The notes under the pieces: generated by a model
Told to the model about the DNA's origin: nothing
Database searches by the model: none
What the model saw: only the letters and a program-made list of their open reading frames with translations
NCBI GenBank assembly: GCA_964057225.1
Contig: OZ059894.1
Coordinates: 16,988,001-17,052,000, forward strand
Source of the DNA: Auanema rhodensis
Taxonomy: Eukaryota > Animalia > Nematoda
Reading direction: 5' to 3'
Length of the DNA stretch: 64,000 nt
Made by a program: the position numbers and the translations under genes
In this document: positions 46,688-49,600 of the stretch, in pieces
Numbering within the stretch: position 1 is the first letter of the stretch
How the letters are laid out: each line of letters opens with the position of its first letter

Positions 46688-49600
46688 TCAATTTGGGTGG
46701 CTGAAAATCACAGAAATTGAAGTTTAAGTATTCAAAATAGAGCTCACGTTGTTAATCGGTTGATAGCGGATTGTACATCATGGGGATTCGCCTGAGGATG
46801 AGCTATTCGTTTCAAAAGTTCTGCAATCAACTGATTGCATACACCGGGTGAAGCCTGTAAAACAATGGTTACTTTCTTTGAAGAATAAATGCTATGCTAC
46901 CTGTTCAGCTTGTCGTAAAGCTCCTGCTAAGGAATCAAGCTCAGCTCGCGCATGGCGAGTTCTGGACAGTTTGTCCAAGGCAGGAAGAAAAGAACAATCC
47001 AACGCATTCTAAAAATATAAAAATTAAAACACTAAGATAATCATTTATTTACCTCTCTGCGAGGTTGTTTGACTGGTTCTTCATGTGGATATTGGTTTGA
47101 GGAGCGGTCATATCCCCTGTAATCGGACTGTGGTTTGTTCGATATTTCTCTCATTCCGCCATCGGATAATCTTAACTTATTTTGTACTTCACAACAATTG
47201 TAAAAATCATACCTGGAATCATGAGATCGAGCAGATCCTGATCGCGCTCGGTCAGCAGCCGCCCTTGTGGATGAAGAAGGTGATGAATGGTAAGATTGTT
47301 GATTTCTTATGAGTGACGCATTCTATATTTCTATATTTTAAAGGATATTTCATAAATTAACCTACAGGGCTGCTTGGAGGACTTCCTAGAGTGATAGTTG
47401 TTGGACCAGCGATTCCATGTGTGCGCGAAGTAGGAACAGAAACATGTGCCGAACTTTTACGTGAATTATCGTTCATATTTGCATTGCGAAGTTGCTCCGC
47501 AACAGCTAACACAGCAGGAGAATTCTGAATTAGCAATGTATTTAAAATATACGTAAAAAAAATTAAAACCTTCACAATAGTATCTCCAGGACTTGGGTCT
47601 CTTTGAATAGCAGGTCGTGTTCGCTCTCTTTGTCGTACAGTTTCATCTCTATAAAGTTAAATAATTAAAACTGAACATTCCACAATTTTACCTCTCTTTA
47701 TCTTTAGGACCCCTTACAGTAGGATAGTCCCAACTGCTAGATCCAGTGCCACCATCAGAATCATCATCAACATCGCTATCAGATGAAACTCCAGTACGTG
47801 CCCTAAAAATGTTATTTTGCTCAATAAATGTGATAAATTCCAAACCTATATTCAGCAGCTCGTTCTATTAAATCAACTAATATACTATTTTTCTTAGCCT
47901 TTTTAATGAAAACGTGTTTAAGCAATTCACTTGCAGTTGGCCGCTGAAAAAATGAATAATAAATATGACTTACAATTAAACAAAAACAAACATTATCGGG
48001 ATTCTTATTAAGGCATTGTTCAACAAAGCTTTGAAAAGCTCGGCTCCAGTGTCCTGTTAATTGTGGTGGGTCATTTTTGGGAATTAAAAACAAAACTGAA
48101 AACATAACAATCCGGCAAACATAAACGAAATGAATCATACCTCTCATTGGATGGAGATCACTATGAGGAGGTTCACCGTTAGCCAATTCTATGGCAGTAA
48201 TTCCCAAAGACCAAATATCAGCCTAAAAGACAATAACGGTTTAAGTTAAGTATGACACAAAAACAACAGAGGTTAAACATCAAATACAAAGACAAAACAA
48301 ACCTTGTAATCATAACTAGCTTGCTTGATAAGTTCGGGGGCCATCCAGAAAGGGGAACCAACAAAGGTAATGCGTTTTTTTACAGTTTCAGTAAGTTGAC
48401 CGGCAACACCGAAATCAGCAACTTTAACATCTCCATGTTCCGAGACTAACACATTAGCAGCTGAACAAAAGACAAGTAAGACACAAGGAAATGCAAAAAA
48501 CACAATAATAATGAATTTCAAAATTTAAATAGGAATAACACCGCACAGTAAGGGACAGAACGCTTTGTGAGAACACAGGAAAGATAAAATGATTAAGTTA
48601 AACCTTTTCATCATAAAGCCCCTGAGATATAACTTCAGGCGCCATAAAAAAAGGAGTCCCCACAAAAGTATTGGCCTTACATCCACTAATTGTTTCTAGA
48701 CTTCGAGCTACACCAAAATCTCCTAACTTAATAGAAGAGCTGGAGGAATCAAGTAACACATTGGCACCTTCACTAACCCAAGTCATAACTAACGCTAGAC
48801 GGAAACAACTAACCTTTGATATCACGATGAATCTTCTTTTCAGAATGCAAATACTCGAGACCTTTTAAAATTTCTCTCAGAATAACAGCTATATGACTTT
48901 CATCTAGTTTTCCCGCCTTTGTCAGATCTAAAGCTGAACCTCCTCCAAGGTATTCCATAATAATCCATAATTTTGCTCCCTTAAAAAACCATTAAATATT
49001 GAAGAATAAATGCTGTACCTTTAAGTAGCTTCCATAATATTTCGTTACATAAGGCGAATCACATTGACTGAGCACCTAAAACATATATTTAAATCATCGA
49101 ATATACTTAAAACAATACTTGAATTTCTTGTTGGATATCTTCAATTTCATCCTCTGCTTGTTCCAAATCAATGATTTTTATAGCAACCACCTAATTTTGA
49201 TCAGTAAAAATAAATCTAATTTCGAAAACATACTTGTCCATTCCGATTATCGATGCCCTTATAAACTTCGCCGAATGATCCTCGTCCGATCCTCTCCTGT
49301 CGTGTGAAAATTTGTTCGGGATCAAGTTTCTAAAAAAAATAATAAGAAATTTAAAATTATTCATGCTTACCTTGTTAAATGCTATCATTTTTATTTAAAA
49401 CCTCATACACACAAAATAGAACCCCCTACTAAAAGAGAATTATAAATGTTACCGTCTTTCACGACCAAAGAATGGAATAAAGAAATAAAATAATTTAAAA
49501 AATAATCAACGATTTACTAAATTTTTAAAGGAATGAAACATTTGTAGAAAATGAATGGATTCCACAAGCATAACTCGAAATCTGATAAGTATTCAAAAAC

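What the first reader, a model, noticed from the sequence alone, without database searches (positions are those of the whole stretch)
48303..48814. gck-1 swaps its catalytic core via mutually exclusive exons: two different activation loops from one kinase gene
Seen in sequence: after the exon ending HRDIK-G| (48814) come two tandem exons, A (48604-48767) and B (48303-48460). Each runs from the catalytic loop through DFG, the activation loop and APE. Both start in phase 1 and end in phase 0, so including both or neither frameshifts the next ADIWSLG exon. B is the canonical GCK-III segment ([29 protein letters not shown]). A is intact but very different ([33 protein letters not shown]), looks more MEKK/NEK-like by eye, and keeps N, DFG, the activation-loop Thr, GT and APE. 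Inference: splicing switches the phospho-regulation site, P+1 substrate pocket and inhibitor sensitivity while the CCM3/STRIPAK-binding tail stays the same. Exon A has a weak GAAG acceptor after a 46-nt intron, which suggests it is the regulated form. I recall that C. elegans gck-1 isoforms may differ in this segment, so it could be conserved rather than new.
Basis: partly seen in the sequence, partly recalled or inferred. Interest (0 to 1): 0.85.

Follow-up and report, generated by a model that had tools for sequence, protein, structure and literature searches.

The report
Known gck-1 alternative kinase exons
A nematode GCK-III kinase gene (gck-1) really does use one of two tandem, related exons to build its activation loop, but the same exon pair was already shown experimentally in C. 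elegans, so this copy in a relative of Auanema is ordinary.

Summary
On the minus strand, the exon ending at 48814 is followed by exon A (48604-48767, 164 nt) and exon B (48303-48460, 158 nt). Both are 3n+2, have GT..AG borders and share 59% of residues. Using both or neither gives an immediate stop codon. Spliced RNA contigs from four runs of one study carry either A or B. A has about 30-37% of the k-mer depth.

It is not new. Kuroyanagi et al. 2014 (PMC4165533) confirmed C. elegans gck-1 mutually exclusive exons 4a (155 nt) and 4b (158 nt) by RT-PCR. Exon A is the orthologue of 4a.

Fetched loci and proteins show the A-B pair in Auanema, Caenorhabditis, Diploscapter, Pristionchus, strongylids, ascarids, Syphacia, Thelazia and Steinernema. 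The A exon is missing at DNA level in Trichuris, Brugia, Meloidogyne, Bursaphelenchus and Halicephalobus.

A-type exons form one clade (support 98/94) and are under purifying selection (omega about 0.11 here and about 0.003 in Caenorhabditis).

Exon A is a diverged GCK-III exon, not MEKK- or NEK-like. The only position that separates A from B consistently is the arginine two residues before the activation-loop threonine, which is alanine in A.

The functional difference between the isoforms remains untested.

The parts
48604..48767 (-). Exon A. This is the alternative activation-segment exon, orthologous to C. elegans gck-1 exon 4a. It is 164 nt (3n+2) and encodes G-ANVLLD...GDFGVAR...[16 protein letters not shown]...YDEK.
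   Evidence: Searches give the sequence and frame. One search shows a 221-nt RNA contig in all 4 runs. Searches support orthology. Searches show purifying selection.
48303..48460 (-). Exon B. This is the canonical GCK-III activation-segment exon, orthologous to C. elegans exon 4b. It is 158 nt (3n+2).
   Evidence: Searches give the sequence and frame. One search lists joints 48221>48302 and 48460>48814 in all 4 runs. One search gives E about 8e-22 to STK25 and STK24. One search shows it is 158 nt in every species examined, as in PMC4165533.
48814..48979 (-). Upstream constitutive exon, ending in HRDIK plus one G of a split codon. The codon becomes Gly (GGT) with exon A and Ala (GCT) with exon B.
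48768..48813 (-). The 46-nt intron before exon A. Its acceptor GTGAAG|G has no U-tract. Its last 22 nt (48768-48789) are 21/22 identical to Auanema JU1783, while the middle of the intron is 33% identical. That stretch is a candidate cis-regulatory element and contains a second copy of the donor heptamer GGTTAGT.
48461..48603 (-). The 143-nt intron between A and B. It is too long for steric exclusion. It ends in a near-consensus acceptor, TTTTGTTCAG.
   Evidence: the 40-nt criterion is from PMC4165533
48223..48302 (-). The 80-nt intron after exon B.
48141..48222 (-). Downstream constitutive exon (ADIWSLG...). It is read in frame only if exactly one of A or B is included.
46688..50514 (-). The whole gck-1 coding region. 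The candidate ATG is at 50512-50514 and exon 1 ends at 50224. There are 16 coding exons per isoform, and the TGA stop is at 46688-46690. Isoform A is 644 aa and isoform B is 642 aa.
   Evidence: joints and the 5' loose end; the loose end maps to 50225-50254. The start codon is inferred.

Best explanation
This is the gck-1 (GCK-III / MST3-MST4-STK25 type, STE20 group) gene of a rhabditid nematode close to Auanema. Exons A and B come from one ancient tandem exon duplication and are spliced in a mutually exclusive way. The gene therefore makes two kinases that are identical except for about 54 residues: the end of the catalytic loop, beta7-8, the DFG, the activation loop, the P+1 loop, APE and alpha-EF.

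Shown:
- Both forms are in RNA, with A at roughly one third.
- Both exons are 3n+2, so double inclusion or double skipping puts a stop codon within 0-4 codons.
- The pair is the orthologue of the C. elegans 4a/4b pair, which was validated by RT-PCR and depends partly on NMD.
- Exon A is under purifying selection.

Inferred:
- Exon B, with its consensus acceptor, is the default.
- Exon A has a poor acceptor after a near-minimal 46-nt intron whose 3' half is conserved with Auanema. It is used when that site is helped, or simply because it is transcribed first.
- Mis-spliced double or skipped products are removed by NMD.
- The A isoform is an active kinase. It keeps the catalytic Asn, the DFG Asp, the activation-loop Thr and APE.
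- Its activation-loop control and substrate or ATP pocket are altered. It loses the otherwise invariant Arg at position -2 from the activating Thr (Ala in 15 of 16 A-type exons). It loses the Gly-Gln after DFG. Its loop is 1-2 residues longer. Its residue before DFG changes (Ala in B; Gly here, Cys in Caenorhabditis). Trp becomes Phe in the P+1 loop in Rhabditina.
For: - Sequence, frames and stop codons.
- RNA: separate A and B contigs appear in 4 runs. Depths for A are 6.7/19/16.2/13.8 and for B 15.6/32.9/33.7/34.2. The sums are close to the depths of the flanking contigs.
- Published precedent: PMC4165533 Table 1 and Fig. 1I. gck-1 exons 4a (155 nt) and 4b (158 nt) are both 3n+2 with a 138-nt intervening intron. 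Supporting reads were 19 versus 31, and NMD dependence was scored 'Partially'.
- Orthology: the C. elegans protein P0187 carries an A-type segment. The same exon order is seen in Auanema, Necator, P. pacificus, C. nigoni, C. remanei and Steinernema, with B always 158 nt.
- Tree: the A clade has support 98/94 and the B clade 97/96.
- Selection: omega is about 0.11 for window versus Auanema, and there is 1 change in 51 residues at pS 0.73 for C. nigoni versus C. remanei.
- GCK-III identity of both exons.
- Diagnostic positions.
- Conserved end of the intron before A.
Against: - The RNA data are assembled contigs from one study. They cannot show absence of double-inclusion products, stage, sex or tissue, and their depths are only rough guides.
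- The two joints for exon A were not printed.
- No experiment, here or in the searchable literature, shows that the two isoforms differ in activity, regulation or substrates.
- The weak acceptor at exon A is not conserved in all species.
- The conserved intron stretch rests on a two-species comparison.
Confidence: 0.9

Rival explanations
1. The A isoform is a weakened or regulatory variant (low-activity or dominant-negative partner in GCK-1/CCM-3/STRIPAK complexes), not a kinase with a different specificity.
For: A-type exons lose the Arg at -2 from the activation-loop Thr and the Gly-Gln after DFG. Both are fixed in B-type and outgroup sequences. Caenorhabditis A-type exons have DYG instead of DFG. 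The A lineage evolves much faster than B (branch lengths).
Against: The catalytic Asn, the DFG Asp, the activation-loop Thr (Ser in Nippostrongylus), GT and APE are all kept in A-type exons. Selection on A is strong.
Confidence: 0.15
2. A and B are two independently regulated cassette exons, not a strictly mutually exclusive pair. Double-inclusion or skipped transcripts would then be common and act as an NMD-coupled way of lowering gck-1 output.
For: In C. elegans the fidelity of the choice is 'Partially' NMD-dependent. The 143-nt intervening intron could be spliced out. Contigs cannot show absence.
Against: No A-B joint appears among the best-supported joints. The A and B depths add up to about the flank depth. 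Both exons are 3n+2, so only single inclusion encodes a kinase. RT-PCR in C. elegans classed the pair as mutually exclusive.
Confidence: 0.05
3. Exon A is a decaying duplicate or splicing noise with no function of its own.
For: It is missing from several nematode lineages. It is left out of, or mis-fused in, many gene models.
Against: It is kept intact and in frame in at least 20 species of clades III, IV and V. Omega is about 0.11 and about 0.003. It makes up about a third of transcripts here and 19 of 50 reads in C. elegans.
Confidence: 0.03
4. Exon A was captured from another kinase family (MEKK- or NEK-like), as the first reader suspected by eye.
For: NEK2 and MEKK2 appear among exon A's solved-structure matches at E about 1e-8.
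Against: The GCK-III kinases MST4, STK24 and STK25 rank first at E about 1e-11. Within its own genome, exon A's best match is exon B. All A-type exons form one clade next to nematode B-type exons. The phases and borders are identical to those of B.
Confidence: 0.02

Closest known systems
C. elegans gck-1 mutually exclusive exons 4a/4b (Kuroyanagi, Takei and Suzuki 2014, Worm 3:e28459, PMC4165533; event list from Ramani et al. 2011)
   Same: Same gene, same position in the kinase domain and same order (variable A-type exon first, then a 158-nt B-type exon). Both exons are 3n+2. The intervening intron is of similar size (138 versus 143 nt). The upstream exon has a similar share (19:31 reads versus about 30-37% depth). 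The peptide signature is shared ([28 protein letters not shown]).
   Different: Exon A is 164 nt here and 155 nt in Caenorhabditis. It has DFG here and DYG in Caenorhabditis. The species is different, a relative of Auanema with 88% protein identity to Auanema sp. JU1783. NMD dependence and strict exclusivity were tested only in C. elegans.
Other kinase genes with homologous mutually exclusive exons inside the catalytic domain: C. elegans akt-1 6a/6b (PMC4165533), human FYN FynT/FynB (PMC9741552), and human JNK (MAPK8-10) exon 6a/6b and p38alpha exon pairs (the last two from my own knowledge, not checked here)
   Same: A tandem exon duplication gives two versions of one stretch of the kinase domain, and the rest of the protein is shared.
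   Different: Different kinases and different stretches. The FYN pair covers the SH2-kinase linker and the ATP site. The gck-1 pair replaces the whole activation segment.
Vertebrate GCK-III paralogues MST3/STK24, MST4/STK26 and STK25
   Same: Both are ways of diversifying GCK-III catalytic domains while keeping the CCM3/PDCD10-binding C-terminal domain. Both exons match these kinases best.
   Different: Vertebrates diversify by gene duplication. These nematodes do it by swapping one exon. All three vertebrate paralogues keep the K-R-x-T activation-loop motif, which A-type exons lose.

Membership tests
GCK-III subfamily of STE20 kinases (GCK-1 / MST3 / MST4 / STK25) | An N-terminal STE20-type kinase domain whose closest relatives are GCK-III kinases | tested here: met
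   Exon B matches STK25, STK24 and MST4 at E about 8e-22, and exon A matches them at about 1e-11. The spliced protein is 88% identical to Auanema GCK-1 and 57% to C. elegans GCK-1 over its full length.
GCK-III subfamily of STE20 kinases (GCK-1 / MST3 / MST4 / STK25) | A C-terminal dimerisation domain of the PDCD10/CCM3 type | tested here: met
   Pfam PF20929 (PDCD10_N) scores above its cut-off in the 88%-identical Auanema orthologue (26.6 bits) and in C. elegans GCK-1 (24.8 bits). The window protein aligns with the orthologue to its end. The window's own spliced protein has no reference, so it was not scanned itself.
GCK-III subfamily of STE20 kinases (GCK-1 / MST3 / MST4 / STK25) | A MO25-binding W-x-F type motif after the kinase domain | tested here: inconclusive
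   The spliced protein has [11 protein letters not shown], at the place where, by my recollection, human MST3 has EWSFTTVR. This is a resemblance only, and binding was not tested.
Homologous mutually exclusive exon cluster (tandem exon duplication) | Adjacent exons that are homologous to each other and have the same phases | tested here: met
   The peptides are 59% identical. Exon B is exon A's best match in its own genome. Both exons start in phase 1 and end in phase 0.
Homologous mutually exclusive exon cluster (tandem exon duplication) | Each exon is found singly between the same flanking exons in mRNA | tested here: met
   The joints for B are listed in all 4 runs. The A contig has exon A plus 26- and 32-nt flanks and no loose ends in all 4 runs. 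The joints for A themselves were not printed.
Homologous mutually exclusive exon cluster (tandem exon duplication) | Double inclusion and double skipping are absent or removed | tested here: inconclusive
   Both give premature stops, and no such joint appears among those listed. Contigs cannot show absence, however. In C. elegans this was shown by RT-PCR with partial NMD dependence.
Homologous mutually exclusive exon cluster (tandem exon duplication) | Orthology with C. elegans gck-1 exons 4a/4b | tested here: met
   Same position and order, with B 158 nt in all species. All A-type exons, including the C. elegans one, form one clade with support 98/94.
Steric-hindrance type of exon exclusion (intervening intron too short to splice) | An intervening intron below about 40 nt | tested here: not met
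   The A-B intron is 143 nt here and 93-794 nt in six other species. The threshold comes from PMC4165533.
Docking-site / selector or loop-out RNA pairing type of exon exclusion | Intron-intron base pairing stronger than chance and conserved | tested here: not met
   The best duplexes between the three introns are no better than shuffled sequence in 5 species (z from -1.2 to +1.9). One 15-nt inverted repeat in the window (48593-48607 / 48235-48249) is absent from Auanema.
MEKK- or NEK-derived exon | The closest relatives of exon A are MEKK or NEK kinases | tested here: not met
   GCK-III kinases rank first. The best match in its own genome is exon B. The A clade sits with nematode GCK-III exons.

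The most novel reading that the evidence does not exclude
The A/B pair is an ancient, Rhabditida-wide split of one GCK-III kinase into two catalytic versions. It is present in clades III, IV and V and was lost several times. The A version has given up the Arg at -2 of the activation-loop Thr, which is invariant in B-type and outgroup sequences. It would then be switched on, switched off or aimed differently, for example with a different dependence on autophosphorylation or on STRIPAK-PP2A. In the Auanema group the choice would be set by a conserved element in the last 22 nt of the 46-nt intron before exon A. The searchable literature holds nothing on the function of the two isoforms or on how far the pair is conserved.
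Probability: 0.3. Interest if true: 0.5.

Novelty: already known. Interest (0 to 1): 0.28.

Why it matters
The basic fact is already in the literature for the model nematode, so it adds little. The new material is modest.

- **Age and selection.** The pair is old. It was present in the common ancestor of Rhabditida clades III-V and has been lost repeatedly. It is strongly constrained, so the second activation segment very probably has its own job in GCK-1/CCM-3/STRIPAK signalling.
- **A concrete starting point.** One consistent residue difference (Arg to Ala at -2 of the activating Thr) gives a specific mutation to test.
- **Annotation errors.** Public gene models in at least ten nematode genomes fuse A and B into one impossible protein or drop A altogether. 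This is worth correcting.

Tried and rejected
- **RNA pairing between the introns (docking/selector or loop-out).** No duplex was better than shuffled sequence in 5 species. A 15-nt inverted repeat flanking exon B in the window is not conserved in Auanema. Rejected.
- **Reduced synonymous change in exon A as a sign of exonic splicing signals.** pS was 0.46 against 0.62-0.83 in neighbouring exons. The codon-level test gives only p = 0.06, and C. nigoni versus C. remanei shows no such effect. Not claimed.
- **Recursive splicing through the AG|GT at the start of exon A.** The GT is not conserved in Necator or Caenorhabditis. Dropped.
- **A region search with the Nippostrongylus A segment.** It reached few candidates (133) and missed Caenorhabditis. 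A whole-protein search was needed instead.
- **The C. elegans locus.** It could not be fetched because the exact product is not on record. C. nigoni and C. remanei were used instead.
- **Stage, sex and tissue regulation.** This could not be examined.
- **The window's spliced isoforms.** They have no reference, so they were not sent to the structure, Pfam or database tools. Orthologues and single exons were used instead.
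Full report
**1. What is in the sequence**

The gene lies on the minus strand. The constitutive exon 48814-48979 ends with HRDIK plus one G of a split codon. 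A 46-nt intron follows (48768-48813; it starts GTTAGT and ends GTGAAG). Next comes exon A (48604-48767, 164 nt), then a 143-nt intron, then exon B (48303-48460, 158 nt, acceptor TTTTGTTCAG). An 80-nt intron follows, and then the exon that starts ADIWSLG at 48222.

Each alternative exon runs from the last residues of the catalytic loop through the DFG, the activation loop, the P+1 loop and APE to the start of helix F. The split codon reads Gly with A and Ala with B.

Both exons are 3n+2. With A alone the reading frame gives 644 residues, and with B alone 642. With both exons a stop comes after four codons of B. With neither exon a stop comes at once.

The two peptides are 59% identical. In a six-frame search of the whole 181-Mb genome, exon B is exon A's best match (E = 1.1e-7), and the next hits are 49% identical.

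**2. RNA evidence**

One sequencing-run search found four runs of one study whose contigs hold about half of the words of the gene. Laid on 46400-49700, these contigs skip 15 listed introns, all GT..AG, so they come from spliced RNA.

Around the alternative region, every run has two short contigs.
- One is 215 nt: 26 nt + exon B + 30 nt. Joints 48221>48302 and 48460>48814 are listed.
- The other is 221 nt: 26 nt + exon A (48603-48765) + 32 nt.

The extra 2 nt of the A contig's 32-nt flank fit a GT that matches on either side of the junction. The A contig has no loose end, so its flanks lie on the neighbouring exons. This is the bubble expected when two alternative exons sit between shared flanks.

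Word depths were as follows.

| Run | Exon A | Exon B | A share |
|---|---|---|---|
| X1 | 6.7 | 15.6 | 30% |
| X2 | 19 | 32.9 | 37% |
| X3 | 16.2 | 33.7 | 32% |
| X4 | 13.8 | 34.2 | 29% |

The A and B depths together roughly equal the depth of the flanking contigs.

Limits:
- The data are contigs only, from one study, with stage, sex and tissue unknown.
- The two joints for A were among three joints the tool did not print.
- Contigs cannot show that double inclusion is absent.

**3. It is already known**

A full-text search found Kuroyanagi, Takei and Suzuki 2014 (PMC4165533). Their Table 1 and Fig. 1I list C. elegans gck-1 exons 4a (155 nt) and 4b (158 nt).
- They are classed as a homologous mutually exclusive pair, validated by RT-PCR.
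- Both are 3n+2, and the intervening intron is 138 nt.
- Nucleotide identity is 52.2% and amino-acid identity 48.1%.
- Supporting reads were 19 versus 31.
- NMD dependence was scored 'Partially'.

No other paper in the library deals with gck-1 splicing or with differences between the isoforms.

**4. Organism and orthology**

The genome holds 3,451 copies of the nematode SL1 leader sequence. The spliced protein is 88% identical over its full length to GCK-1 of Auanema sp. JU1783, and 57-66% identical to other rhabditid GCK-1 proteins. The window therefore comes from a rhabditid nematode near Auanema.

The C. elegans protein P0187 carries an A-type segment with the same signature: HRDIK-G, ANVLLD and [16 protein letters not shown]. 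It has DYG in place of DFG.

In the Auanema locus an unannotated exon A lies at L007:5063-5226. It is 164 nt, 89% identical in protein, and follows a 45-nt intron.

The order upstream exon, A, B, downstream exon is also found in Necator, Pristionchus pacificus, C. nigoni, C. remanei and Steinernema carpocapsae. Exon A is 164, 164, 155, 155 and 161 nt in those species, and exon B is always 158 nt.

Protein records show A-type segments in further species: Nippostrongylus, Trichostrongylus, Haemonchus placei, two Ancylostoma species, Diploscapter, three Pristionchus species, Ascaris, Toxocara, Syphacia and Thelazia. Many of these records are faulty gene models that read through from A into B.

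At DNA level the A exon is absent in five species.

| Species | What lies between the upstream exon and exon B |
|---|---|
| Trichuris trichiura | 49-nt intron |
| Meloidogyne hapla | 44-nt intron |
| Bursaphelenchus xylophilus | no intron |
| Halicephalobus | no intron |
| Brugia pahangi | 1,330-nt intron with no relic, even with a profile search without filters |

**5. Evolution**

A tree was built from 36 segments (53 columns).
- All 16 A-type exons fall in one clade (support 98/94).
- All 14 B-type exons fall in another (97/96).
- The single Trichuris exon is sister to the B clade.

So there was one duplication, no later than the common ancestor of Rhabditida clades III, IV and V, followed by several losses. 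With so few columns, and a fast-evolving A lineage, the tree cannot say whether the duplication predates Trichuris.

Exon A is under purifying selection.
- Window versus Auanema: pN 0.077, pS 0.46, omega about 0.11.
- C. nigoni versus C. remanei: one change in 51 residues at pS 0.73, omega about 0.003.

**6. What differs between the isoforms**

Exon A's best solved-structure matches are MST4, STK24 and STK25 (E about 1e-11), ahead of NEK2 (1e-8) and MEKK2 (5e-8). Exon B matches the same three at about 1e-21. A is thus a diverged GCK-III exon, not a MEKK- or NEK-like one.

Column by column across species, A keeps the catalytic Asn, the DFG Asp, the activation-loop Thr, FVGTP and MAPE.

Only one position separates A from B consistently. 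It is the residue two before the activating Thr.
- It is Arg in all 20 B-type and outgroup sequences.
- It is Ala in 15 of 16 A-type exons.

Other positions are fixed in B but free or shifted in A.
- The Gly-Gln after DFG becomes Arg, Thr or Lys plus a variable residue.
- The activation loop has insertions of one to two residues.
- The Ser after NVLL is mostly Asp.
- Trp becomes Phe in the P+1 loop in 11 of 16 A-type exons.
- The residue before DFG is Ala in B, Gly in this window's A and Cys in Caenorhabditis A.

Whether these changes alter activation, substrate choice or inhibitor binding is inference. They sit in the parts of a kinase that set those properties, but nothing was measured. The shared C-terminus has the PDCD10/CCM3-type dimerisation domain (on orthologues).

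**7. How the choice may be made**

The 143-nt A-B intron rules out steric exclusion, for which the threshold is about 40 nt. Intron-intron pairing is no better than shuffled sequence in five species. The one inverted repeat in the window is not conserved.

What remains is the frame rule with NMD, plus unequal splice sites. Exon A has no U-tract at its acceptor and follows a near-minimal intron, whereas exon B has a near-consensus acceptor.

The last 22 nt of the intron before A are 21/22 identical between the window and Auanema. The middle of that intron is 33% identical, and the two other introns are 53-62% identical. The conserved stretch holds a second copy of the donor heptamer GGTTAGT. 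It is a candidate control element, resting on two species only. The weak acceptor is shared by Auanema, P. pacificus and C. nigoni, but not by Necator, C. remanei or Steinernema.

**8. Verdict**

The finding is a real feature, accurately described and nicely supported by RNA. It is the orthologue of a published, experimentally validated exon pair. The new elements are the phylogenetic spread, the strength of selection, the diagnostic Arg-to-Ala change, the conserved intron end and the widespread mis-annotation. Interest is low to moderate.

Noticed in passing
G000:C3:6741531-6766485 and C3:14134320 onward (outside the window): The nematode SL1 leader sequence occurs 3,451 times in this genome at up to one mismatch. 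It sits in long tandem arrays with periods of about 252 and 341 bases. That is an unusually large number of SL1 gene copies.
   Followed up: no
window 49371-49388 (minus strand); RNA depth at 49397-49507 in runs X3 and X4 only: A possible alternative first exon (ATG..., MIAFNK, donor GTAAGC) lies 41 nt upstream of the 49329 exon. It would give a 551-residue protein without the 97-residue N-terminal extension encoded by 50224-50514. The joint was not printed.
   Followed up: partly
Proteins P0001, P0151, P0003, P0154-P0158, P0165, P0166, P0168, P0184, P0188, P0192: Public gene models of gck-1 in Nippostrongylus, Ascaris, Trichostrongylus, Necator, Ancylostoma, Haemonchus placei, C. nigoni, C. 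remanei, Toxocara, Thelazia and Syphacia read through from exon A into exon B, giving a kinase with two activation segments. The Auanema JU1783 and Steinernema carpocapsae models omit exon A entirely.
   Followed up: yes
P0187, P0186, L010:4098-4252, L011:6943-7097: In Caenorhabditis the A-type exon has DYG instead of DFG and Cys before it (KICDYGVAK). It is nevertheless almost invariant between C. nigoni and C. remanei.
   Followed up: partly
window 48768-48789 (minus strand): The last 22 nt of the 46-nt intron before exon A (GTTATGACTTGGGTTAGTGAAG) are 21/22 identical to Auanema JU1783, although synonymous sites nearby are close to saturation. The stretch repeats the donor heptamer GGTTAGT of the same intron.
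   Followed up: partly
window 48593-48607 and 48235-48249: A 15-nt, 87% complementary inverted repeat joins the donor of exon A to a site 13-27 nt before the acceptor of the next constitutive exon, so it could loop out exon B. It is not present in Auanema and is no better than chance in the duplex test.
   Followed up: yes
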